Positions 7,760-63,695 of a stretch of DNA of 64,000 nt are shown piece after piece. The position numbers were made by a program, and so were the translations under genes. The stretch covers positions 10,561,303-10,625,302 of the forward strand of contig NC_069007.1 of assembly GCF_001194135.2 (NCBI RefSeq), read 5' to 3'. This stretch comes from Octopus bimaculoides. Lineage: Eukaryota. How positions within the stretch are numbered: position 1 is the first letter of the stretch; each line of letters starts with the position of its first letter. The notes under the pieces are model-generated. The model worked only from the letters and a program-made list of their open reading frames with translations. It did no database searches and was not told where the DNA came from.

Positions 7760-8457
7760 NNNNNNNNNNNNNNNNNNNNNNNNNNNNNNNNNNNNNNNNN
7801 NNNNNNNNNNNNNNNNNNNNNNNNNNNNNNNNNNNNNNNNNNNNNNNNNNNNNNNNNNNNNNNNNNNNNNNNNNNNNNNNNNNNNNNNNNNNNNNNNNNN
7901 NNNNNNNNNNNNNNNNNNNNNNNNNNNNNNNNNNNNNNNNNNNNNNNNNNNNNNNNNNNNNNNNNNNNNNNNNNNNNNNNNNNNNNNNNNNNNNNNNNNN
8001 NNNNNNNNNNNNNNNNNNNNNNNNNNNNNNNNNNNNNNNNNNNNNNNNNNNNNNNNNNNNNNNNNNNNNNNNNNNNNNNNNNNNNNNNNNNNNNNNNNNN
8101 NNNNNNNNNNNNNNNNNNNNNNNNNNNNNNNNNNNNNNNNNNNNNNNNNNNNNNNNNNNNNNNNNNNNNNNNNNNNNNNNNNNNNNNNNNNNNNNNNNNN
8201 NNNNNNNNNNNNNNNNNNNNNNNNNNNNNNNNNNNNNNNNNNNNNNNNNNNNNNNNNNNNNNNNNNNNNNNNNNNNNNNNNNNNNNNNNNNNNNNNNNNN
8301 NNNNNNNNNNNNNNNNNNNNNNNNNNNNNNNNNNNNNNNNNNNNNNNNNNNNNNNNNNNNNNNNNNNNNNNNNNNNNNNNNNNNNNNNNNNNNNNNNNNN
8401 NNNNNNNNNNNNNNNNNNNNNNNNNNNNNNNNNNNNNNNNNNNNNNNNNNNNNNNNN

Positions 8458-15970: not shown

Positions 15971-16127
15971 ACCCAAAATTCATGAACCTAGGTGAAAATA
16001 AGCATGATATCTGAATTGAAGATAGTGAGTTTGGTTTCTTTTTTTTTTTTTTTTTTTTTTACCAATCTTTCCTCTTTTGATAAAATTTCTAATTTTTGTC
16101 TTTGTTTTCTTTCTTTTCAATTTCCAG

Positions 16128-16566
16128 GCAGCTTTGCAGGTTAGAAAAAAAAATGAGCTCAGATATATCAATGATTTTAAGCATTTTACGCAACCAGTAT
16201 TCAACTGCTGCTGTATCAGTCCCAGCCGTAAGTTTCAGTGGAGGTGCTCAAATCAGCTCTTCGTCACAGGCCCCAGCCAGTGGCAGTTATACAGCGCCAG
16301 TCTCTTGTAAAACAGCTGTATCAGAGCCGAAAACAACAGCAGGAAGTAACTATCAAGCATTTCCAAAATCTAGTGAACAACAACAACTACATCAACAACA
16401 GCAACAACATCAACAACAACAGCAACAGCAGCAGCAGCAGCAACAACATTCGCAGCAGCTGGATTCAAATGTAACAAACATGGTGGGTGGGGATGTGAGT
16501 TCCGTTCCAGATGATGATGTATTCCAGTTCCCCCCTCCGCCTCCTCCTTATTCAAGTGATGTCCAG
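16128..16566 (+). CDS. KCNH2: ERG-type K+ channel exon (R-QLCRLEKKMSSDISMILSILRNQY...polyQ...PPPPPPYSSDVQ)
   Basis: Strong pyrimidine tract + TTCCAG acceptor, GTAAAG donor at 16567. QLCRLEKKMSSDISMILSIL resembles hERG [20 protein letters not shown]; phases are consistent. Confidence 0.92.
16378..16458 (+). repeat. Coding CAA/CAG repeat, polyQ (Q3-LH-Q5-H-Q12-HS-Q2)
   Basis: Read directly in the frame of the 16128-16566 exon. Confidence 0.95.
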
Positions 16567-18318
16567 GTAAAGATAGAAAATTTTAATTCTTCAATTTCTT
16601 TTCTGAAAGCCATTAAAAAAACGATGTTAGTCCCTATTTTCAATGAAACAATATAGAGACATAGATCCAAACTCACACAGTTTACTAGTTTCAGCTTAAG
16701 AGCTATGGCCATGCTGGGGCATGGCTGTTAGCTATGTTACACTTTTCCTACTTGAAACCTCCTCTGATGTATGGCTTTTGTGAATGAGAGGGTTTGGTGT
16801 TGCTGCCCTCATCTGCGTTTCCTTCTGTGATACCAAGATATGGATTCAGAGAATCATATGGTTGTCACAGAAAGTTCTTCTACTGGACTCAGCTGACAGA
16901 CCACAAAACAGCCCAATACAGAGAAATGTTATGTAGTATGTCTATGAAGCTGAAATCCAGAAGATCTGATTGATGAAATTATTTCATAAGGTATATATAA
17001 ACCATAAAATATCAGGTGGTACAAGAGATGAATAAATATTTATTTAACCACATGACATCCTAAGGATTACAGCTGTTTCACAGCCTTCTTCATGTTGTAA
17101 TAATTTCAGTGTGGAAGAAATTATGCTTATATGTTTGTATTACTATGCATTATACAGTAAAATTGCATATTTACAAATCAATACAAATAAAGAAAGCTAG
17201 ATCATCAGAGTATCATGGTTACACCAACGATTCGACTAATGGCAGTACCCCAGCATGGCCACAGCTCTTGTGCTAAAACTAGTAACAGAATAAAAGAATA
17301 AAGAAAGAGAATCAGAATTCTGTATCTGTGTGTGTGTGTAATAGCTAAGGCATTTAGTACAAAAGCTTGGATATTATTGTCTAAACTCTGTATTCACAAT
17401 TCGTAGTAATAAAGAGTGGCTGTCTGATGAGGTGCAATATTTATGTAACATGTGTGACATGCCTACTTTAAAAGCGTCTTTCCTACATGTGCACATTACA
17501 TGCAAACAAACAAACATATTCATCTGCATGTGTATGTGTGTGTGTAATGAAATATCTCACTTTATAAAATGTCTAATTACTAAATCATTCTGCTGCTTTC
17601 TAAAAAAGAATGAAGTAGTACCATACATGATTGAATCTGACTAAAAACAAGAAAAATAAGTCCCTCTCTGATATATTCTAAAGGAGCAGAGTGTATTAGT
17701 TACAATATTAATTACTTGATTAATTAATTAGACCTCAGCTTATTACAAACGACAGTTGAAATATATCTGACAAAATACAAAGCATTCTGTTTATCTTTTT
17801 TACTCTTTTGGTCTGATTGGGTATATAAAAATGATGAAACAGAAAGCCTTCCATTTTGTCAGCTATACATTTACACATACACTCACACACATCACATACA
17901 CACACTCATAATATATATTGCACACAGACACACATATATATACACATATATCTACACATACACATATATCTACACATACACACACACATGTAAAAAGGCA
18001 CATTGTCATCATTTCACGTCCGTTTTCCATGCTGGCATGGGTTGGACAGCTTGACTGGGGGCTGTCTTGGCAAAAGACCGCACCAGGCTTCACTGTCTGT
18101 TTTGACAGGGCTTTCATCACTGGATGCCCTTCTTAACACCAACCCCCTTACAGAGTGGTATACAAGTACATATACCATCATCATTTAACATCCACACCAG
18201 CATGGGTCAGACGGTTTGACTGGAACCGGTAAGCCAGAGAACTGATTGGTAAGACCAGCCATGATGTATACTTAATACTATAAAATTTGAATATAACACA
18301 TATATACANNNNNNNNNN

Positions 18319-21432: not shown

Positions 21433-23016
21433 GTTAATATATTCAGCTCACGATCATCTGGTCCTGAGTTCAATTCCCGGCAACGTGTTGCATCCTTAAG
21501 CAAGACACTTTATTTCATGTTGCTCCAGTCCACTCAGCTGGCAATAATGTCTTGTACCTGTAATTCAATGAGCCAGGTGTGTCTGTGGAGTACTCAACCG
21601 CTTGTACGTTAATTTCACAAGCAGGCTGTTCCATTGATTATTGTTGTGTCAGTTTGAGAGGCAAGAACTGGCTAGTTTGAACAGGAAACAGGTAGAACAT
21701 TTGAGCCAGTTATGGCTAAAAGGTATGCATGTCTGTGGAGTACTCAACCACTTGCACATTAATTTCATGAGCAGGCTGTTCCATCGATCCAATCAACTGG
21801 AAACCTTGTCATAAACAACCGAGTGTCCAGTCACCCATTATCACTGTCTGAAAAAGTAGAAAGTTACTTTAGATAATGTAGTCTTATTTATCCTCACCAC
21901 CTCTTGATAAAGGGGTGACAGTCACGCCTGGAAGGCTTTTGATTGTAGGGCTGCACAATCAGAACTGATCTAGTTTACAGGATAAACATTTTAAGTAGTT
22001 CAGATGTTTTTTAAGCCCAGGTCAAACAATTAAACAGAAGTATATCTTTTTATATTTATCTAATGAATTCTTTCACATTTTTGAGTGAAGAAAGAGTATG
22101 AAGCGATTTCCAGTAAATTTGTCTGCTATTTCTTGCAGGTTAAACAACCAGCTTCAAAATTCCCCCGTTGCTTTCGTCCAAAATCGCAGAATTTTTAAAG
22201 GGAGATAACTATCTCGCACTAGCCTTCTCAAGGGAGATAACATACGCTTTATATTTCGTTTTTGTATTTGGTTTGCAAGATTTTTAATGATACAGATTTA
22301 ACTGTATCTTGGGTGGGTCATTTTCCTAATAATAAACACATGCACTGCTTCTTTTTTCTTTATCATTTGTTAATTGCTTAACTATTTAACCGATTGTCGC
22401 GAATTGAATAGTGACGAAAAGACTGACAAAAGTTACTGATAGATAGACCAGCAGAATNNNNNNNNNNNNNNNNNNNNNNNNNNNNNNNNNNNNNNNNNNN
22501 NNNNNNNNNNNNNNNNNNNNNNNNNNNNNNNNNNNNNNNNNNNNNNNNNNNNNNNNNNNNNNNNNNNNNNNNNNNNNNNNNNNNNNNNNNNNNNNNNNNN
22601 NNNNNNNNNNNNNNNNNNNNNNNNNNNNNNNNNNNNNNNNNNNNNNNNNNNNNNNNNNNNNNNNNNNNNNNNNNNNNNNNNNNNNNNNNNNNNNNNNNNN
22701 NNNNNNNNNNNNNNNNNNNNNNNNNNNNNNNNNNNNNNNNNNNNNNNNNNNNNNNNNNNNNNNNNNNNNNNNNNNNNNNNNNNNNNNNNNNNNNNNNNNN
22801 NNNNNNNNNNNNNNNNNNNNNNNNNNNNNNNNNNNNNNNNNNNNNNNNNNNNNNNNNNNNNNNNNNNNNNNNNNNNNNNNNNNNNNNNNNNNNNNNNNNN
22901 NNNNNNNNNNNNNNNNNNNNNNNNNNNNNNNNNNNNNNNNNNNNNNNNNNNNNNNNNNNNNNNNNNNNNNNNNNNNNNNNNNNNNNNNNNNNNNNNNNNN
23001 NNNNNNNNNTATATAG

Positions 23017-28719: not shown

Positions 28720-30327
28720 ACACACACACACACAAATATATACTCACAAAAACATGCATATGTATATAGTTATGCATACATATTATATATATACACACAC
28801 ATACGTATGTTAGTTTTATATAATACTTATATACATTTGTATAATAAGTAAACACACACAAATATAGATATTTCTAAATACATACATACACATACACCAC
28901 AACACACATAATGCTCTGTGTATTTAGATATATTTATATGTAAAATACATTAGATATATGTGGATGTATGCACATATATGTATATGTGCGTGCATGTATG
29001 TGTGTGTGTATGTCTATGAGTCTGTGATATAATGTAATACTTACACAGTAGCTTGAATATGCAAACACACTACTTATAGATAAGGGAGCCACATGTCCTT
29101 CATCTAAAGTAAATACCATCACCAATAGAGAGAGAGAAAAACACTTTATTGTACCTTCCTGTTTGATCAGGCTCTACAAAACAGAGATATTTGTTTCATC
29201 TGACATAACAGGAAACTTATGGCCCTGGTAGAGAATTACATTCTAGATGAGGGATTGGTTGCCTCTTTTTCCATGTAAAATTAAACAGTTTATAAATACC
29301 GCATGTTGATGAAAGCTTACAGAGAAACAAACACACACAGACACATACATACACACATATATATATAGTGCCAACCCCTTTTTATCATCAAAATTAGTAT
29401 ATCCCAAACAGTTAACTTAATATTGTCCAGTGTCTGTGCATATATATATATATANNNNNNNNNNNNNNNNNNNNNNNNNNNNNNNNNNNNNNNNNNNNNN
29501 NNNNNNNNNNNNNNNNNNNNNNNNNNNNNNNNNNNNNNNNNNNNNNNNNNNNNNNNNNNNNNNNNNNNNNNNNNNNNNNNNNNNNNNNNNNNNNNNNNNN
29601 NNNNNNNNNNNNNNNNNNNNNNNNNNNNNNNNNNNNNNNNNNNNNNNNNNNNNNNNNNNNNNNNNNNNNNNNNNNNNNNNNNNNNNNNNNNNNNNNNNNN
29701 NNNNNNNNNNNNNNNNNNNNNNNNNNNNNNNNNNNNNNNNNNNNNNNNNNNNNNNNATATATATATATATATATACAGAAACATTATAAATCAGTTAATA
29801 TATTTAAGCATAATGTTATCAACTAGTTATTATCATCAAAATTAGTGGAACCCAAATACTTTGACTTAAAGTTATTTGTTGATTCCTATTCTCAACTATG
29901 ACCATATATGAAACGGATAACAAAAAGCAGCTCCCACTGCATTTATATACCTAATATTATCTGCTGGTTATTGTTATCAACAAGGGCTCTAATTCAAAGT
30001 GATAGCAATAAGCAGCTCTCACTGTATTCCTTATTGTGATTTGATTTATGTTTGACAAAACAGTGTAAACTTGAGGAGTAATGGGGAGATACGGTTTACA
30101 TGAAACTTAAAATAGGCTCTACAACTAAATAAGAGTAACTTTTGATGTTTGTTGAGGTAAAATAAACTGTATATAGACATATAATACATGCACACACACA
30201 CACACACACACATGCACGCACACATACACACACACACACATGTATATATAATTACGTACATATATGTATATATACACACATATAGGTTTAGCAATGCAAA
30301 CAAGGCAAACAGAACTCAAAACGTGTT

Positions 30328-31016: not shown

Positions 31017-32929
31017 AACAACCACATACATATACTTAAACAAACTGACAGCAACACAAACACATACTGATATGCTCAAGCATTTAAAATTACACATTAA
31101 CAAGCGCAAACTCAAAGTAAATGAGAAAACTATTGAAAGAAAAATCTGAGAGACAGAAAATCGCAATTAATTATAGAAGATACACATAACTCCCTTTTGT
31201 GAAATTAGACACATATTATATAAATATACATACACTATATATATATATGTATATATATATATAAATCTCAAATCTTCAGAATTAATATTCCGTGCATTTC
31301 GTAACTGATTTTTGGCAAAAGATCTTTCTAGAAAAACTCTTATCTTCTGCTTTTAATGGCAATTTAAATGGCTGGGTTACAGAACAATGTTTTTTTTTTT
31401 TACTATTATTTTTTTTGTGCAGTTTTTTTTTAAATCATTTAATTTANNNNNNNNNNNNNNNNNNNNNNNNNNNNNNNNNNNNNNNNNNNNNNNNNNNNNN
31501 NNNNNNNNNNNNNNNNNNNNNNNNNNNNNNNNNNNNNNNNNNNNNNNNNNNNNNNNNNNNNNNNNNNNNNNNNNNNNNNNNNNNNNNNNNNNNNNNNNNN
31601 NNNNNNNNNNNNNNNNNNNNNNNNNNNNNNNNNNNNNNNNNNNNNNNNNNNNNNNNNNNNNNNNNNNNNNNNNNNNNNNNNNNNNNNNNNNNNNNNNNNN
31701 NNNNNNNNNNNNNNNNNNNNNNNNNNNNNNNNNNNNNNNNNNNNNNNNNNNNNNNNNNNNNNNNNNNNNNNNNNNNNNNNNNNNNNNNNNNNNNNNNNNN
31801 NNNNNNNNNNNNNNNNNNNNNNNNNNNNNNNNNNNNNNNNNNNNNNNNNNNNNNNNNNNNNNNNNNNNNNNNNNNNNNNTATATATATATATATATATAT
31901 ATGCTTCTTTCTTTCTTTCTCTCTTAATCTTTAACATTTTGTCTCCATCATGACCAGCTATGGATCACAAGTTCTCCACCACTGATCTCTACCCTACCCC
32001 CACCTCCTTGGCCAGTCATCTCCACCTCCACTTCACACTCACTCTCGACTCGACGCATGACAACGATCGGACACCATCGAAGTAGCGAGTGAAGAATAGT
32101 CGTCCGTCATCCACATTCACACGTTACCTGCTTGCTTGTGCTGCACATGGGACTAGTCAGGTGGCCATGGTCAGGGTGATCTGCCCCTTCATGTAGCCAC
32201 CACCCAGCACACATGTGGCAAGCTAATGCATTAGTCAAGAGACTCAGCCACATTCATATATGTCGTATGTAAAAGAAAACCTAAAAAGCATTGAATTTCC
32301 AGCCGAGTGATTCACTTCAGTATCCATGTGGAAACATGGAGCAAGCTAGGATATTCCCAGAGGGTTTATTCTCATTGATATCTACATGTGGCAAATTGAA
32401 ACATTTAGGGAGTAACTCATATTTGCATACTACATGGAAAAAGATATCTGGTGTGATTCACTTGCATTTGTATGCCACATGAGGGGAAGGGGGAAATTCT
32501 AATTGGGGTTAACTAACATTCACGTGCTCCATGTGGCATGTTATTATATTAATGGAATGAGTCAGCAAATTTAATGGAATGATTTATCTAAACCCCACAT
32601 GTGGGAAGCTAGGATGTTGGTCATGTGTGGACTTGGTCATACTACATGTGGGACACTAATGTGGTAACATACATCCATTGCTAGAAGTGGAAACCTACAG
32701 CCACATCTCCACTCCATATGTCGAAAATTTGGGCATTCATGGAGTCACTTATAATGTAGGGGAATGTATAATCACTTAACACTCAATATTATTGAAAGAT
32801 CTCACTCAGTCACACATTAAACTTGGAGAATCACATTACACTCATGTGTAACTTAATGCTGGAGAGACTGACTAACATGTAGCATTAATGAGATATGAGC
32901 AGAATGGCTGACTCAGAGGTGGCAGGACT

Positions 32930-44927: not shown

Positions 44928-45565
44928 ATGGAAATGATAATGGAACATATTCGGCATATTTTGCTTTATGAGTTCAATAAAGGCAACAACGTAACGGAAA
45001 GTGCGAGGAATATTAATGCAATAAATGGGGATCGGACAATAAGCGTAAGCTAGTGTCATCGTTGGTTCTAGAAATTCCGAACCGGAAACTGCAGCCTAGA
45101 AGACGACCCTCGTCCTGGAAGATTTGTAGAGCTCGACGAGGACGTCTTGCAAAACCTGGTGGAACAAAATCCTACCGTAACTGTTGAGGAACAAGCAGAG
45201 AAGCTTGGATTTGGTCATTCAACCATTCATCGACACCGGGATGCCATTGGAAAACCCAGGAAATTGAGTCAGTGGGTTTGTCACAAACTTTCCGAGTCTA
45301 ATCGCGTGCAGAGAGTGAATGTGTGCTCTTCTTTACTGTCACGTCTCAAGAATGAACCTTGTTTGGACCGAATAGTGATTGGTGACGAGAAATGGATTCT
45401 CTATAAAAATGTCAGGCACCGAAGACAGTGGGCAGGGAAAGGAGAAACATTGACACCCCAGACTGAAGAAGGTCTTCACTCACGTAAAGTGCTGTTATCT
45501 GTTTGGTGGGATATGAAAGGCTTAGTCCATTTTGAACATTTAAACCCAAACCAAACGATAACAAA
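44928..45565 (+). mobile_element. Degenerate mariner transposase, N-terminal HTH to first catalytic D
   Basis: MEHIRHILLYEFNKG...SLEDDPRPGR, WVCHKL (WVPHEL variant), IVIGDEKWILYKN and VLLSVWWD motifs. In-frame stops; 3' end replaced by a SINE fragment. Confidence 0.93.
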
Positions 45566-46387
45566 GACACTTGTCCAAGGTGCCATGCAGTGGGATAGAA
45601 TCTAGAATCATGTGGACGGGAAGTTTCTTACCACACAGCCACGCCCGCGCCTATGTTGTTCATATATTTTAACAGCAAAATCTTATATGAACCTCCTCAA
45701 CGGTCTTATAAGCCACTAGTCTATGTTATTGAATATTTCTTTGAAAAAAAAAAGAGCATATATTTCAATTTCAAGGAGATTTGACTGTTAATTCTAGCAG
45801 GCCGAACATCCACATAGAAGCCACCATATCAGCTTCTTTAACCACCGACCTACTTATCCAAATGATCATCATCACTTTACGACCTCTTTTCCATACCCTG
45901 TGTTGGCTATTTCTCAACAACTCCACTATCAGCTAGGCGTAGGCTTATATTAAAAGGCATATCACTGTTTGAAGAGACAATAGTGTTATTTGTAACAGTG
46001 GCACACACAATACTCTACTTCTGCTGCAAAGCAAATTACTACAACCGCAACATTTTTGTCAACAGTTCGGGTATTTTGGTGTATGGACCAACGCCCAAGC
46101 AAATGGTAATTGTATATCAATAATAGCAATTGAGCAAACCATTGTAGCAACTAGCACGGTGATGGCATTATTTTAATTCGAGTTATGAAGTGCAACATTT
46201 TCAGTAGCAGACGACCTTTCAGAGGTTGATTATTACCCTATTCAGAACATTTTTGTTGCAATCAACCATATCACTCGACACTATTTAGCTTAACTTTTAT
46301 TGAGAGTGCATTGTCGTGAAATGTCTTTATGCATACTTACATGCATGTGTGTTTGTGTGTGTATACCTTAAAATAGAAAGATCACTG

Positions 46388-53494: not shown

Positions 53495-53644
53495 ATGGTA
53501 TTTATTATAGAAGGTACCCTAATGACATGGGAAGAAATTTTACCTCACATTTCAAATGTGAAGAAACAAGGAACGATGCAGTTTCTTTACCAGTATAAGA
53601 AATATAAAGACGAAAAAAATTATCCATTTTACTGGGGCGATGAG
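53495..53644 (+). CDS. GCLC: Glutamate-cysteine ligase catalytic subunit-like, coding exon 1 (MVFIIEGTLMTWEE...FYWGDE)
   Basis: Aligns by eye to GCLC MGLLSQGSPLSWEE...GILQFL...KWGDE. 150 nt, GTAAGT donor at 53645, the same phase-0 intron position as recalled for vertebrate GCLC. Confidence 0.93.
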
Positions 53645-55012: not shown

Positions 55013-55119
55013 ACTGAATATTCCTTAATACGGTTTGACCATGAAGAACGAGTTGTCCAGTTATCTTTGACTTCCACGTCTTTTTTTGGATCCCCTCAAG
55101 TACAGGCATTAGAATCAAG
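55013..55119 (+). CDS. GCLC: GCLC-like coding exon 2 (TEYSLIRFDHEERVVQLSL...)
   Basis: TTTCTTTTTAG acceptor, GT donor at 55120; resembles VEYMLVSFDHENKKVRLVL; phase 2 out. Confidence 0.9.
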
Positions 55120-56233: not shown

Positions 56234-56341
56234 TGTATGGACTTCAGAATATGGCGAATTTATGATGGAAGGCAAACCCAGAAATCCATTCGGTGCTGCC
56301 ATCACCGATTTGAATCATACAGAAGAACATTTTATAGAAAG
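56234..56341 (+). CDS. GCLC: GCLC-like coding exon 3 (VWTSEYGEFMMEGKPRNPFG...EEHFIE-R)
   Basis: Resembles [26 protein letters not shown] donor at 56342. The acceptor is ambiguous: AAG ending at 56233 or in-frame TAG ending at 56191 (adds 14 aa). Confidence 0.88.
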
Positions 56342-58494: not shown

Positions 58495-58560
58495 ACGCAA
58501 AGCGATCAAACAATTCTTGGGCCCAAATGAAAGTTTAGTGAGTTTGACGGCTTTTCCCAG
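58495..58560 (+). CDS. GCLC: GCLC-like coding exon 4 (R-RKAIKQFLGPNESLVSLTAFP-R)
   Basis: TTTTAG acceptor, GTATGT donor; resembles RRKEATSILEENQALCTITSFPR; phases 2/2. Confidence 0.9.
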
Positions 58561-59881: not shown

Positions 59882-59998
59882 ATTGGGCTGTCCTAATTTC
59901 ACTTTCCCCTCCTATGAGGTAAACAAGCATCCAACAGAACTTCACAAATCTGTTTTCGTAGCAGATGCTGCACTGTGTTCCCAGCTTCCTTTATTTGT
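59882..59998 (+). CDS. GCLC: GCLC-like coding exon 5 (LGCPNFTFPSYEV...KSVFVADAALCSQLPLF)
   Basis: TTTCTATTTCAG acceptor, GTGAGT donor at 59999; resembles LGCPGFTLP...SKSLFFPDEAINKHPRF. Confidence 0.92.
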
Positions 59999-62571
59999 GT
60001 GAGTCACTGTTCTTCTTTTTGTAATTCATTAACGTTTTCCTATGTTAAGATGTACTAGATGGTTCAATTTCCATCAATTTCTACCAAGCTGAAAAGCCAC
60101 ACTCGGCGCAGACTTTTAGGCTAGCACCTGCGGGCTAATTAGGCCAGCAGCCCAAGTGTAAGGGGAGCTAAATAGCATAATTACAATACGTCTATAATGA
60201 CTATATGCCCCGGTGCTGTTTGATCAGAGGTCAAGGATAGAAGAGAATTAATTCTGTAATTCTGTAATTCTATTGTTTTAGTCCCAAGTTGAATTCCAAC
60301 TGTTGGCCAATTTGTCCCAGAGTTCTTATCTCGACGTAAAATTAACGAAGCGAATGTCATATATCTCCCCCTTGACCTCTGACCTCATCTGACAAACACC
60401 AACTAGGATGGTGTGAACCAACCAAGCTTTATCTGCTAGAAATAGCAACCCAAATGCTTTAAAATCAGATCCCAATGCTGGACGTTCAAGAACTAAATGA
60501 AGGGCAGGTTTTTCTTCCCGGGATCATTCTTATTCCAAAAATATATAATATATCTAAGTAGAGCAAATGTAGACCGAGGTACAGGAAGCCTGTCGTATAT
60601 TTGTGTGCGCGCGTGTGTGCGTTCGTGCGTTTATGACCCCCGAAACGTATCGGTTCTGCGTAAGAATAAGTACGATAGGAGAAGTATCAGGCTCAGAAAA
60701 ACCTACAGGGTTCCATTCCTTCGACTGAAATTTCTTCAAGGCTGTGCCCCAGCATGGTCGCAGTCTTATGACTGAAACAAATAAATGTAAAAGATATGTA
60801 TATTTTTTTTTTTTTTTTTTTTTTTTTTNNNNNNNNNNNNNNNNNNNNNNNNNNNNNNNNNNNNNNNNNNNNNNNNNNNNNNNNNNNNNNNNNNNNNNNN
60901 NNNNNNNNNNNNNNNNNNNNNNNNNNNNNNNNNNNNNNNNNNNNNNNNNNNNNNNNNNNNNNNNNNNNNNNNNNNNNNNNNNNNNNNNNNNNNNNNNNNN
61001 NNNNNNNNNNNNNNNNNNNNNNNNNNNNNNNNNNNNNNNNNNNNNNNNNNNNNNNNNNNNNNNNNNNNNNNNNNNNNNNNNNNNNNNNNNNNNNNNNNNN
61101 NNNNNNNNNNNNNNNNNNNNNNNNNNNNNNNNNNNNNNNNNNNNNNNNNNNNNNNNNNNNNNNNNNNNNNNNNNNNNNNNNNNNNNNNNNNNNNNNNNNN
61201 NNNNNNNNNNNNNNNNNNNNNNNNNNNNNNNNNNNNNNNNNNNNNNNNNNNNNNNNNNNNNNNNNNNNNNNNNNNNNNNNNNNNNNNNNNNNNNNNNNNN
61301 NNNNNNNNNNNNNNNNNNNNNNNNNNNNNNNNNNNNNNNNNNNNNNNNNNNNNNNNNNNNNNNNNNNNNNNNNNNNNNNNNNNNNNNNNNNNNNNNNNNN
61401 NNNNNNNNNNNNNNNNNNNNNNNNNNNNNNNNNNNNNNNNNNNNNNNNNNNNNNNNNNNNNNNNNNNNNNNNNNNNNNNNNNNNNNNNNNNNNNNNNNNN
61501 NNNNNNNNNNNNNNNNNNNNNNNNNNNNNNNNNNNNNNNATATATATATATATAAAATCTTTTTTCACTTTACTTGGTTCAGTCATTGGACTTTGGCCAT
61601 GCTGGGGCATCACCTTGAAGGTTTCCCCATTCAAATGAATCAGCTCCAGTATTTTATTTAAGCCTGGTTCGCTTTGTCAAACCGCTAAGTTACGAACTTA
61701 GCAAACCAACTAAGCAAACTAACTCTGGTTGTCAAGGGGTGGTGATGGACAACTATACGTACATACACGCACACACATACACGCACACACATACACGCAC
61801 ACACATACACGCACACACATACACGCACACACATACACGACAAATTTCCTTTCAATTTCCTTCTACGAAACCCAGTCGCAAGGTTTTGGTCGGCCCAGAG
61901 CACTAATAGAAGACACTTGCCGAAGGTGCCACACAACAGGAACTGAACCCAGAACCATAAGGTTGGGAAGCAACTTTTTACTATAAAATCAAGTTGTCTG
62001 ACCCTATAAACTCTGGATATACGACATCTGTTGAGTACTGTAATGAACTGTGATTGCCTTAGCTTTGTATTTCAGAATATCCGGACTATTTGTTTTATAT
62101 ATTAGCAAGATCAAAGATTAAGGAAGCTTTACTGTATCACTGAATGAAGGGAAGTTTCAGGGTGGGGTTTGGCATCAAAATTTTGAGGTTTAAATACCAG
62201 CAATATACTGTGTTTATGGGGAGAAAAATATTGAAAAACATCAAAACGTCAGTGACAAATAAACGAGGGCAGTATAAGGTGATCGTGAGATGTGCTAAAA
62301 ATAGCAGCTAAATACACATAAAAAAACATAATTGTTATTATTATTATTATTATTTTTTTTTTTTGCTTTTTGTTTCGGTTTTGCATAGTCGTATGATTTC
62401 CTGTGTGTAGAACACAAATTGGCGAAAATTTTTCTAAAAATTCCAGAAAATAAAATATGTTATGAGGGGTTTTATGTTGTGCGTAAAGTAGAATTCCTCC
62501 AACATGATTATGCATACACCACAATCGTGAAAACTATCAAATCCTCAGGAATAAAATGTTTTGAATTTTCC

Positions 62572-62969
62572 NNNNNNNNNNNNNNNNNNNNNNNNNNNNN
62601 NNNNNNNNNNNNNNNNNNNNNNNNNNNNNNNNNNNNNNNNNNNNNNNNNNNNNNNNNNNNNNNNNNNNNNNNNNNNNNNNNNNNNNNNNNNNNNNNNNNN
62701 NNNNNNNNNNNNNNNNNNNNNNNNNNNNNNNNNNNNNNNNNNNNNNNNNNNNNNNNNNNNNNNNNNNNNNNNNNNNNNNNNNNNNNNNNNNNNNNNNNNN
62801 NNNNNNNNNNNNNNNNNNNNNNNNNNNNNNNNNNNNNNNNNNNNNNNNNNNNNNNNNNNNNNNNNNNNNNNNNNNNNNNNNNNNNNNNNNNNNNNNNNNN
62901 NNNNNNNNNNNNNNNNNNNNNNNNNNNNNNNNNNNNNNNNNNNNNNNNNNNNNNNNNNNNNNNNNNNNN
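62572..62969. other. Assembly gap (one of 14; other large ones at 7760-8457, 22458-23010, 29455-29756, 31447-31879, 54090-54859, 56478-56898, 60829-61539)
   Basis: N runs, mostly next to (TA)n or poly-T tracts. Confidence 1.
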
Positions 62970-63477
62970 AAGATTTCCTGAAGAAGGAGTCCTAACCCCG
63001 AGATACTGAAATACAACAAAAGAGTACAATCCATGGAATTATGTCTTATAACTTGCATTGTTATAATCGACTAGTCCCCTTCCCAAAAAATTTTCAAGGC
63101 CTTGTGCCTAGAGGAGAAATAATTATTTCAGTATGTGAAGGCGGCGAGCTGGCAGAATCGCTAGCACGCCGGATGAAATGCTTAACGGTATTTCGTCTAC
63201 AGCTACGTTCTGAGTTCAAATTCCGCCGAGGTCGACTTTGCCTTTCATCCTCCCGGGGTCGATAGAATAAGTACCACTTGAACACTGGGGTCGATGTAAT
63301 CGACTCATCCCCACCTCCCCCAAGCTACCCTTGTGTCAAAAAATAGAAATATTTATTTCTGTATGTTAATTTATAAAAAGCATGATACTTCTTCAAAACA
63401 AATCTTGTCTTATTCTGTATTTCATTTTGATTTCTTTAAATTGATTTCATCTCAAATATTGAAAATTCTTGTTTCAG

Positions 63478-63695
63478 TTTATAAAGATAAAAATACCATG
63501 ATGCCATACGGGGAAGACTTGTCTGAATATGGAGACAATGAAGAGATGAAGAAACATTTGAAACCAGGCTATATCTACATGGACTCACCAATATTTGGGG
63601 CTGGTTGTTGTTCTCTCCAAGTTACATTCCAAGCTGCTGATATGAAAGAAGCTGCTTATCTCTATGACAATCTGGTACCGCTTACTCCACTTATG
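63478..63695 (+). CDS. GCLC: GCLC-like coding exon (YKDKNT...YIYMDSPIFGAGCCSLQVTFQAADMKEAAYLYDNLVPLTPLM); gene continues beyond the window
   Basis: TTGTTTCAG acceptor, GTAAGG donor at 63696; resembles FKDKNT...[42 protein letters not shown]. Confidence 0.95.

What the first reader, a model, noticed from the sequence alone, without database searches (positions are those of the whole stretch)
63568..63625. GCLC-like enzyme with a remodelled active-site motif (MDSPIFGAGCCSLQ)
Seen: the motif reads YIYMDSPIFGAGCCSLQVTFQ. Established (recalled): eukaryotic GCLC has YMD(A/S)MGFGMG(N/C)(C/S)CLQ; the Cys just before LQ is the well-studied active-site Cys, and the neighbouring Mets lie near the substrate pocket. 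Here Met>Pro, Gly>Ile, Met>Ala and that Cys>Ser are all changed. The metal-binding residues WGDETE and SEY...ME and the LQ glutamine are intact, with clean splice sites and no stops in six exons. Inference: a functional paralog that still activates glutamate but may ligate a different amine or thiol than cysteine, or be regulated differently, which would mean an unrecognised gamma-glutamyl peptide pathway.
Basis: partly seen in the sequence, partly recalled or inferred. Interest (0 to 1): 0.75.

Follow-up and report, generated by a model that had tools for sequence, protein, structure and literature searches.

The report
Octopus-only glutamate-cysteine ligase paralog, remodelled pocket
The flagged motif is real and sits in one member of an octopus-only, tandemly duplicated family of copies of the glutathione-making enzyme GCLC that keep the catalytic metal site but have rebuilt the substrate pocket, so they probably make something other than the normal glutathione precursor, although no assay or expression data exist.

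Summary
YIYMDSPIFGAGCCSLQVTFQ is encoded at 63570-63632 (+), in exon 7 of a 16-exon gene that starts at 53495 and runs off the window. The window is Octopus bimaculoides and the gene is XP_052833098.1.

It is a paralog. A canonical GCLC ([15 protein letters not shown]) lies on another chromosome of the same genome. The window gene belongs to an octopod-only clade with 100% bootstrap support: about six lineages in Octopus, partly tandem, and one copy in Argonauta.

The gene is intact. Fifteen exons have ag/gt splice sites and no stops, and the missing 59-nt exon 6 falls exactly in assembly gap 62572-62969. It is under purifying selection (dN/dS 0.25 against O. sinensis) but evolves roughly 2-3 times faster than canonical GCLC.

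All Mg ligands and R313, W445, K451 and R472 are kept. M258, M262, C266 (human C249), Y362, human H370 and C553 are replaced. Changes at otherwise invariant sites cluster next to ligand contacts (p = 0.003), and pocket positions differ between paralog lineages.

Best reading: an active ATP-dependent ligase with altered substrate specificity. This is inferred, not shown. A pseudoenzyme or an unregulated gamma-Glu-Cys isozyme remain live rivals. No literature on the family was found.

The parts
53495..53644 (+). Exon 1 (ATG to WGDE). It encodes Mg ligand E50 of the WGDE(T)E motif.
   Evidence: tblastn and manual model. Same 150-nt size as O. sinensis exon 1 and 96.7% identical. Donor gtaagt.
55013..55119 (+). 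Exon 2 (TEYSLIRFDHEER...). It encodes E52.
   Evidence: ag/gt boundaries, 107 nt as in O. sinensis.
56234..56341 (+). Exon 3 (VWTSEYGEFMMEGKPRNPF...). It encodes Mg ligands E96 and E103. The canonical EGTPG is EGKPR here.
58495..58560 (+). Exon 4 (RKAIKQFLGPNESLVSLTAFP)
   Evidence: 100% amino-acid identity to P0007.
59882..59998 (+). Exon 5 (LGCPNFTFPSYEVNKHP...LPLF), 117 nt, donor GT|gtgagt in phase 2.
   Evidence: Size and phase match O. sinensis exon 5. The RefSeq model uses a donor 2 nt upstream.
62572..62969 (.). Assembly gap (N run) that hides exon 6, a 59-nt exon that reads ...LNIRENFTTRKEERISINVP in the O. sinensis ortholog.
   Evidence: O. sinensis 21777-21859 aligns to window 62489-62571, directly against the gap. 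O. sinensis exon 6 is 21868-21926, and alignment resumes at window 62970.
63478..63695 (+). Exon 7 (218 nt, phase 1), which carries the flagged motif and Q268.
   Evidence: 94% nt identity to O. sinensis exon 7. Matches Pfam GCS positions 1-41.
63579..63620 (+). Motif core MDSPIFGAGCCSLQ: P258, I259, A262 and S266 replace canonical M, G, M and C. Q268 is kept.
63381..63477 (+). Intron sequence that RefSeq XP_052833098.1 reads through as coding (HDTSSKQILSYSVFHFDFFKLISSQILKILVS) to bridge the missing exon 6. This is an annotation artefact.
   Evidence: No homolog has this segment, and the true acceptor is cag|TT at 63478.

Best explanation
The motif lies in exon 7 of an intact gene for an octopod-specific GCLC paralog.

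Origin: the family arose by DNA-level duplication of the cephalopod GCLC gene, with all intron positions and phases preserved. It then expanded, partly in tandem, into about six lineages in Octopus.

Likely mechanism (inferred): the protein keeps the GCL fold and the complete machinery for Mg-ATP-dependent activation of a carboxylate (E50, E52, E96, E103, Q268, E470, K451, R472). The residues that line the amino-acid substrate sites have been replaced, and they differ from one paralog lineage to the next. The most likely working is therefore an ATP-dependent ligase that still forms an acyl-phosphate intermediate but couples a different acceptor than cysteine. The donor may also be bound differently, because the Y362 hydroxyl and M262 are lost. 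Human Cys553, a known redox/electrophile regulatory site, is Pro in these proteins, so that regulation is probably absent.

Shown here: paralogy, intactness, purifying selection, a retained catalytic core, and remodelling that is concentrated around the pocket.

Inferred only: that the protein is catalytically active, and that its specificity has changed.
For: - Paralogy: a canonical GCLC lies on another chromosome of the same genome.
- Clade: the paralogs are monophyletic with 100% bootstrap support, on a long stem, sister to cephalopod canonical GCLC. They share octopod-derived residues with octopod GCLC.
- Gene structure: all 14 comparable introns have the same phase and fall at the same or nearly the same alignment column (12 identical, one 1 column and one 5 columns apart) as in the canonical gene.
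- Integrity and selection: 585 codons without a stop; dN 0.036, dS 0.14, omega 0.25 against O. sinensis.
- Fold: AF2 model of ortholog P0007 has pLDDT 88.8 and pTM 0.92, with query-normalised TM 0.89 to yeast GCL 3IG5. Pfam GCS E = 2e-136.
- Contacts: 10 of the 12 published ligand-contact positions that are invariant in canonical GCLCs are kept in all five well-modelled paralogs. Only M262 and Y362 are changed.
- Location of change: canonical-invariant sites changed in all five paralogs number 18/53 within 6 residues of a contact, against 13/101 elsewhere (Fisher p = 0.003).
- Diversification: M258 and M262 are among the most variable positions between paralog lineages.
- Other lineages: divergent GCLC-like proteins elsewhere change some of the same positions (most consistently 258, 259 and 280; less often 262, 321, 362 and 366) while keeping the metal ligands.
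Against: - There are no enzymatic, metabolite or expression data. The literature searches found nothing on these genes.
- Several replaced residues are ones whose change damages human GCLC: C249A causes a large loss of activity (PMC6532282), and H370L is pathogenic (PMC11444706). The same data therefore fit an impaired or inactive protein.
- One paralog lineage (P0005/P0016) has also lost R313, R361 and W445, which shows the family can drift away from catalysis.
- Omega of 0.25 is relaxed for a core enzyme.
- Distances from the changed residues to the ligands were not measured, because no coordinates were accessible. 'Near the pocket' rests on sequence proximity to published contact residues.
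Confidence: 0.45

Rival explanations
1. Pseudoenzyme or recruited structural/binding protein. The duplicates lost efficient catalysis and are kept for a non-catalytic role, in the way cephalopod S-crystallins were recruited from glutathione S-transferase. The retained acidic residues would then serve metal or ligand binding, or folding.
For: - Residues important for activity in human GCLC are replaced in every paralog: C249 to S/V, H370 to Y. Y362 to F occurs in 10 of 12.
- The paralogs evolve roughly 2-3 times faster than canonical GCLC: 92.3 vs 96.3% identity between O. bimaculoides and O. sinensis, and 63 vs 87% between Octopus and Argonauta.
- The family is tandemly expanded.
- The P0005/P0016 lineage has additionally lost R313, R361 and W445.
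Against: - All six Mg ligands plus K451 and R472 are invariant in all 12 paralogs, including Argonauta. That is not expected once catalysis is dispensable.
- The changes are focused around the substrate sites rather than spread evenly.
Confidence: 0.27
2. Still a gamma-glutamylcysteine synthetase: a tissue- or stage-specific isozyme with altered kinetics, for example one that escapes glutathione feedback inhibition and GCLM/redox control.
For: - The catalytic core is intact.
- E96 and W445, the published contacts of the cysteinyl moiety, are retained in the window gene.
- Ser or Ala at the C266 position occurs in GCS-family proteins that otherwise look ordinary, and in active L. donovani Gcs.
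- Loss of human Cys553 fits a change in regulation.
Against: - M258, M262, Y362, H409 (human H370) and the FENIQST block are invariant in 97-100% of 101 canonical enzymes from sponge to human, yet are changed here.
- Six paralog lineages with different pocket residues are hard to explain by a single unchanged reaction.
Confidence: 0.2
3. A decaying duplicate (pseudogene) or an assembly/annotation artefact.
For: - One exon is missing from the assembly, and the RefSeq model reads through an intron to compensate.
- The window contains 14 N gaps.
- No transcript-derived copy of this protein turned up in the protein collection.
Against: - Fifteen exons are intact with canonical splice sites and no stop or frameshift.
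- Omega is 0.25.
- Orthologs or paralogs exist in O. sinensis, O. vulgaris and Argonauta hians.
- The missing exon maps precisely into an N gap.
Confidence: 0.03

Closest known systems
Canonical animal GCLC (human GCLC; O. bimaculoides XP_052823647.1 and O. sinensis XP_029635280.1)
   Same: Same Pfam family (PF03074). Same 16-exon architecture, with the same intron phases and the same or nearly the same positions. Same Mg ligands, K451 and R472. About 52% identity to octopus GCLC.
   Different: - The MGFGMG(N/C)(C/S)C motif is changed at 258, 259, 262 and 266.
- Y362 is F, human H370 is Y, and human C553 is P.
- FENIQSTNWQT(M/L)RFKPPPP has become IQTIIGSNWHTLKLKLPDE, and EGTPG has become EGKPR.
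- The C-terminal tail is missing.
- The family is multi-copy and partly tandem, and evolves roughly 2-3 times faster.
Saccharomyces cerevisiae glutamate cysteine ligase Gsh1 (PDB 3IG5/3IG8/3LVV/3LVW)
   Same: Only solved homolog by sequence (E = 5e-95) and best fold match (query-normalised TM 0.89). It supplies the numbering used for the ligand contacts.
   Different: 32% identity. Yeast has the canonical M258/M262/C266/Y362 set.
Cephalopod S-crystallins (lens proteins derived from glutathione S-transferase; recalled from general knowledge, not tested here)
   Same: A cephalopod-specific tandem expansion of a glutathione-pathway enzyme gene, with altered active-site residues.
   Different: S-crystallins lost catalytic residues and are structural lens proteins. 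Here the catalytic metal site is strictly kept, and nothing is known about tissue or abundance.
Gamma-glutamyl-amine ligases of the glutamine synthetase fold with new acceptors (for example 1-naphthylamine GS, PDB 8X6Z/8WWU; PuuA, recalled)
   Same: Same superfamily, seen as distant fold matches. They are a precedent for keeping the Mg-ATP/glutamate-activation core while changing the acceptor pocket.
   Different: They are bacterial GS-family enzymes, not the PF03074 GCL family. The resemblance concerns how the octopus protein might work, not family membership.
Divergent 'GCLC-like' proteins in Tachypleus tridentatus, the oribatid mites Oppiella and Medioppia, Mercenaria mercenaria, Gordionus, and some fungi
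   Same: They change some of the same positions (most consistently 258, 259 and 280; less often 262, 321, 362 and 366) and keep the metal ligands.
   Different: They are independent lineages, all 46% identical or less to the octopus family. Most keep H409/H412 and the FENIQST block. Whether they are paralogs alongside a canonical gene was not verified, and the Mercenaria check was inconclusive.

Membership tests
Eukaryotic glutamate-cysteine ligase catalytic subunit family (Pfam PF03074, GCS) | Significant match to the family profile | tested here: met
   The window exon model scores E = 4.9e-13 over profile positions 1-41, as far as the window reaches. Full-length ortholog P0007 scores E = 2.4e-136 over positions 1-372 of 372.
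Eukaryotic glutamate-cysteine ligase catalytic subunit family (Pfam PF03074, GCS) | GCL fold as in yeast Gsh1 (3IG5) | tested here: met
   AF2 model of P0007, which is 92% identical to the window gene: pLDDT 88.8, pTM 0.92. Foldseek against 3IG5: E = 4.9e-48, query-normalised TM 0.89.
Eukaryotic glutamate-cysteine ligase catalytic subunit family (Pfam PF03074, GCS) | Mg2+ ligand set E50, E52, E96, E103, Q268, E470 (yeast numbering) | tested here: met
   All are present in the window gene and in all well-modelled paralogs. Contact list from PMC5613772 Table 3. E470 lies beyond the window end but in the same gene (P0128/L002).
Eukaryotic glutamate-cysteine ligase catalytic subunit family (Pfam PF03074, GCS) | ATP and gamma-carboxylate contacts K451 and R472; cysteinyl-moiety contact W445; R313 | tested here: met
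   All are retained in the window gene. They are lost only in the P0005/P0016 lineage (R313, W445) and in P0012 (W445).
Canonical GCLC (the gamma-Glu-Cys-forming ortholog) | Invariant motif YMD(A/C/S)M(G/A)FGMG(N/C)(C/S)C-LQ | tested here: not met
   P258, I259, A262 and S266 replace M, G, M and C. M258 and M262 are 100% conserved and C266 99% conserved in 101 canonical sequences.
Canonical GCLC (the gamma-Glu-Cys-forming ortholog) | Glutamate alpha-carboxylate contact Y362 and glutamate-site M262 | tested here: not met
   Y362 is F and M262 is A in the window gene.
Canonical GCLC (the gamma-Glu-Cys-forming ortholog) | Orthology: the single GCLC locus of the species | tested here: not met
   The canonical ortholog is XP_052823647.1 on CM046604.1. 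The window gene is on CM046627.1, inside a paralog clade with 100% bootstrap support.
Canonical GCLC (the gamma-Glu-Cys-forming ortholog) | Residues tied to human enzyme function or regulation: Cys249, His370, Cys553 | tested here: not met
   S, Y and P respectively. Their roles are taken from PMC6532282, PMC11444706 and PMC6875399.
Canonical GCLC (the gamma-Glu-Cys-forming ortholog) | Catalyses ATP-dependent ligation of L-Glu and L-Cys; inhibited by BSO and GSH; activated by GCLM | not testable with these tools
   Needs recombinant enzyme assays.
Pseudoenzyme / crystallin-like recruit | Loss of catalytic (metal-binding) residues | tested here: not met
   The metal ligands are invariant across all paralogs.
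Pseudoenzyme / crystallin-like recruit | Very high expression in one tissue | not testable with these tools
   No expression data were accessible, and the literature searches were empty.

The most novel reading that the evidence does not exclude
Octopods have turned GCLC, which is single-copy in most of the animals sampled here, into a small tandem family of active ligases. Their individually different pockets would make octopod-specific gamma-glutamyl (or related) amides or peptides. The recurrence of changes at some of the same positions (most consistently 258, 259 and 280; less often 262, 321, 362 and 366) in horseshoe crab, mites, a clam, a horsehair worm and fungi would then mark an unrecognised, repeatedly evolved class of GCL-derived ligases, with these positions acting as the specificity code.
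Probability: 0.3. Interest if true: 0.75.

Novelty: new variant of a known kind. Interest (0 to 1): 0.5.

Why it matters
GCLC catalyses the rate-limiting step of glutathione synthesis, and its motifs are extremely conserved in the animals sampled here. A lineage-specific, selectively maintained family that keeps the catalytic metal site but rewrites the substrate pocket would be a natural experiment in how GCL specificity is encoded. It could also point to unknown small-molecule chemistry in octopuses. If the proteins turn out to be inactive, they would be a second case, after the S-crystallins, of cephalopods recruiting a glutathione-pathway enzyme for another role. There is a practical point too: current RefSeq names several of these proteins simply 'glutamate--cysteine ligase catalytic subunit', which would mislead redox-gene surveys in cephalopods.

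Tried and rejected
- **Chance ORF or misread frame:** rejected. The exon is 100% identical to an annotated protein and matches Pfam GCS.
- **Only GCLC in the genome, or a normal mollusc variant:** rejected.
- **Exon 6 lost, or a pseudogene:** rejected. The exon maps exactly into N gap 62572-62969, and all other exons are intact.
- **Retrocopy:** rejected. The introns are conserved.
- **A second paralog elsewhere in the window:** none found by tblastn.
- **Yeast GCL structure papers (PMC2781686, PMC2863196, DOI):** not held. Contact residues were taken instead from Table 3 of PMC5613772.
- **dN/dS control for canonical GCLC:** failed. The O. sinensis and O. vulgaris genes span more than 100 kb and no DNA was returned. 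Only amino-acid identities could be compared.
- **P0016 locus look-up:** not on record.
- **Whether the similar divergent proteins in other phyla are paralogs:** the Mercenaria search showed no second Mercenaria GCLC among the top 120 hits, so this is inconclusive.
- **Literature searches** for octopus or cephalopod GCL paralogs and for gamma-glutamyl compounds: nothing relevant.
- **Distances from the changed residues to the ligands:** could not be measured, because model and PDB coordinates are not exposed by the tools.

Full report
**1. Observation**

Frame +3 of the window reads YKDKNTMMPYGEDLSEYGDNEEMKKHLKPGYIYMDSPIFGAGCCSLQVTFQAADMKEAAYLYDNLVPLTPLM. It is bounded by a cag| acceptor at 63478 and a |gtaagg donor after 63695. 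The motif YIYMDSPIFGAGCCSLQVTFQ occupies 63570-63632.

A tblastn with human GCLC was used to locate exons. The probe was recalled from memory and later matched the database human isoform P0081 with no mismatches, apart from that isoform's 38-residue gap. Together with manual splice-site reading, it gave a + strand gene that starts at ATG 53495. The exons are 53495-53644, 55013-55119, 56234-56341, 58495-58560, 59882-59998 and 63478-63695. All have ag...gt boundaries and none has a stop. WGDE|TE spans the exon 1/2 junction, and SEYGEFMME is in exon 3.

**2. Identity of the locus**

The exon is 100% identical to Octopus bimaculoides XP_014785340.1. The full gene is XP_052833098.1 (P0128) on chromosome CM046627.1. 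That locus (L002) is base-for-base identical to the window over the 10,506-nt overlap, gaps included.

The O. sinensis ortholog P0007 is 92% identical and has 16 exons. Its exons 1-5 and 7 have the same lengths as the window exons. Its 59-nt exon 6 has no counterpart in the window sequence.

Alignment of the O. sinensis intron to the window explains why. O. sinensis 21777-21859 matches window 62489-62571, which ends exactly at N gap 62572-62969. O. sinensis exon 6 starts 9 nt later (21868-21926), and the match resumes at window 62970. Exon 6 is therefore hidden in an assembly gap, not lost. RefSeq bridges the gap by reading 97 nt of intron (63381-63477) as coding, which produces a spurious 32-residue insert.

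Exons 8-16 lie beyond the window in L002. All are present with ag/gt boundaries. One is split by a small gap that has duplicated flanks.

**3. Paralog, not the GCLC**

The same genome encodes a canonical GCLC: XP_052823647.1 (P0124) on CM046604.1, with the motif [17 protein letters not shown].

Database searches return a discrete group of 'GCLC-like' proteins found only in O. bimaculoides, O. sinensis, O. vulgaris and Argonauta hians. They are 63-92% identical to the window gene. The next hits are canonical GCLCs at 52% or less. An exhaustive HMMER scan of 1.84 billion cluster representatives finds one representative for the group (77% identity) and nothing else above 46%.

A neighbour-joining tree gives these results:
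- The paralogs form a clade with 100% bootstrap support, on a long stem.
- The clade is sister to the cephalopod canonical GCLCs (76% support).
- Argonauta has a single copy, sister to about six Octopus lineages.

In residues 51-100 and 551-600 the paralogs share derived states with octopod canonical GCLC rather than with another cephalopod sequence (P0019, species not identified). This suggests duplication on the octopod stem, or later gene conversion.

All 14 comparable introns have the same phase and fall at the same or nearly the same alignment column as in the canonical gene (12 identical, one 1 column and one 5 columns apart), so this was a DNA-level duplication.

Copies are partly tandem:
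- In O. sinensis, another GCS gene, P0009 and P0007 lie within about 130 kb on CM016886.1.
- In O. bimaculoides, P0014 lies tail-to-tail 3.4 kb downstream of the window gene, and P0135 lies about 10 Mb away on the same chromosome.

**4. Is it functional?**

Over 585 aligned codons (all exons except exon 6), O. bimaculoides against O. sinensis gives dN 0.036, dS 0.14 and omega 0.25. There are no internal stops. Over the window part alone, omega is 0.34.

Protein divergence is roughly 2-3 times that of canonical GCLC: 92.3 vs 96.3% identity between the two Octopus species, and 63 vs 87% between Octopus and Argonauta. A DNA-based control for the canonical gene could not be obtained.

An AlphaFold2 model of P0007 is confident (pLDDT 88.8, pTM 0.92). 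It superposes on yeast GCL 3IG5 with query-normalised TM 0.89.

**5. What is changed and what is kept**

Yeast numbering is used here. It was validated because every published contact residue lands on the expected residue type.

Of 167 alignment columns that are at least 97% conserved in 101 canonical GCLCs, 98 differ in at least one paralog.

*Kept in the window gene:*
- Mg ligands E50, E52, E96, E103, Q268 and E470
- Q272, R313, W445, K451 and R472

*Changed in the window gene, and in all or nearly all paralogs:*
- M258 to P
- G259 to I
- M262 to A
- C266 to S (human C249)
- T105 to K
- G107 to R
- R280 to A
- V321 to C
- Y362 to F
- D366 to C
- H409 to Y (human H370)
- H412 to Q
- F414 to L
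- The block F437-E-N-I-Q-S-T-N-W-Q-T-x-R-F-K to I-Q-T-I-I-G-S-N-W-H-T-L-K-L-K
- R468 to K
- Human C553 to P

These changes are documented.

*What the literature says about these residues:*
- Y362-OH hydrogen-bonds the glutamate carboxylate in the yeast structure, and the Leishmania equivalent of M262 contacts glutamate (PMC5613772).
- Human C248A and C249A lose much activity (PMC6532282).
- H370L is a disease allele (PMC11444706).
- Cys553 is a site of regulatory modification (PMC6875399).
- On the other hand, active L. donovani Gcs has Ala at the C266 position, so this cysteine is not essential.

*Where the changes fall:*
- Among the 166 of these columns that carry yeast numbering, 18 of the 53 that lie within six residues of a contact are changed in all five well-modelled paralogs. 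Elsewhere the figure is 13 of 101 (odds ratio 3.5, p = 0.003).
- 10 of the 12 contact residues themselves are kept.
- Among canonical-invariant sites, the ones most variable between paralog lineages include M258 (P/K/F/L/M) and M262 (A/L/V/T; G in P0014), as well as 439, 442 and the 200-205 segment encoded by exon 6.

This pattern is remodelling and diversification around the substrate sites with a frozen catalytic core. It is not uniform decay. One lineage (P0005/P0016) goes further and loses R313, R361 and W445, so it may be inactive.

**6. Wider context**

In 149 diverse family representatives the motif is not universal. Variants such as DNTIFGTGCCSLQ (Tachypleus), DNSGFGAGSCCLQ (Mercenaria), DSTCFGIGCCCLQ (Gordionus, several copies on one contig), DSNVFGAACCCLQ and DAPVLGMGCSCLQ (oribatid mites) and DALVFGAGCCCLQ (Dacryopinax) occur.

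These proteins change some of the same positions (most consistently 258, 259 and 280; less often 262, 321, 362 and 366) and keep the metal ligands. Whether they sit beside a canonical gene in their genomes was not established.

**7. Interpretation**

The best-supported reading is an active, neofunctionalised ATP-dependent ligase family with altered acceptor binding and perhaps altered donor binding (confidence about 0.45).

The rivals are:
- a pseudoenzyme or recruited protein (about 0.27);
- an unregulated gamma-Glu-Cys isozyme (about 0.2);
- a decaying copy (about 0.03).

No publication on these genes was found in the held library. The databases only name them 'GCLC-like' or 'GCLC'.

**8. 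Verdict**

This is a new variant of a known enzyme family. Interest is moderate. A simple enzyme assay plus an expression survey would decide between the readings.

Noticed in passing
window 63381-63477 (and P0128 residues about 183-214): RefSeq XP_052833098.1 reads intron sequence as coding (HDTSSKQILSYSVFHFDFFKLISSQILKILVS) and uses a donor 2 nt upstream of the conserved one. This bridges the gap-hidden exon 6, so the deposited protein is wrong over about 32 residues.
   Followed up: yes
window 45147-45605 (+): ORF with a mariner-type transposase fragment (Pfam Transposase_1, E = 5e-16), about 8 kb upstream of the gene. It is probably a degraded transposon.
   Followed up: partly
window 16096-16656 (+): 186-aa ORF with a long poly-Q/H tract. 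It has only weak, sub-threshold Pfam hits (TFIIA, adaptin-binding). It may be an exon of an unrelated upstream gene, or low-complexity noise.
   Followed up: partly
window N runs (14 in all), e.g. 7760-8457, 22458-23009, 29455-29756, 31447-31879: Several assembly gaps are flanked by dinucleotide microsatellites, seen as (TA)n/(TG)n-type translations such as YIYIYI and CVCVCV. This suggests the gaps are repeat-induced breaks. 4,882 of the 64,000 bases are N.
   Followed up: no
L002 31683-31777 (beyond the window; would be window about 75177-75271): A small gap inside exon 12 of the same gene has duplicated flanks (un-merged contig ends). The exon is intact once the overlap is collapsed.
   Followed up: yes
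P0005 / P0016 (O. bimaculoides XP_014788601.1 and the O. sinensis ortholog): This paralog lineage has lost R313 (to A), R361 (to G) and W445 (to G). It also has V at the C266 position and S or C at G263. It is a candidate catalytically dead member of the family.
   Followed up: partly
P0145, P0151, P0153/P0294, P0158, P0266/P0303, P0253, P0251, P0301: Divergent GCLC-like proteins occur in horseshoe crab, oribatid mites, hard clam, horsehair worm (several copies on one contig) and fungi. They change some of the same pocket positions (258, 259, 262, 280, 321, 362, 366) and keep the metal ligands. This may be recurrent evolution.
   Followed up: partly
L003 54444-59012 (-), and the O. sinensis canonical GCLC locus: A collagen/C1q-domain gene (435 aa) is nested on the opposite strand inside an intron of canonical GCLC in both O. 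bimaculoides and O. sinensis.
   Followed up: no
L001 9443-9475: A 33-nt copy of the start of exon 1 (ATGGTATTTATAACAGACGGTACCCTAATGACA), followed by (AT)n, lies about 560 bp upstream of the real exon 1 in O. sinensis. It is either a small duplication or an assembly artefact.
   Followed up: no
P0008 (O. vulgaris) residues 480-534 vs L001 45764-45928: The last 55 residues of O. vulgaris paralog P0008 are 100% identical to the last exon of O. sinensis P0007, which belongs to a different paralog lineage. This hints at a chimeric gene model or at gene conversion between tandem copies.
   Followed up: no
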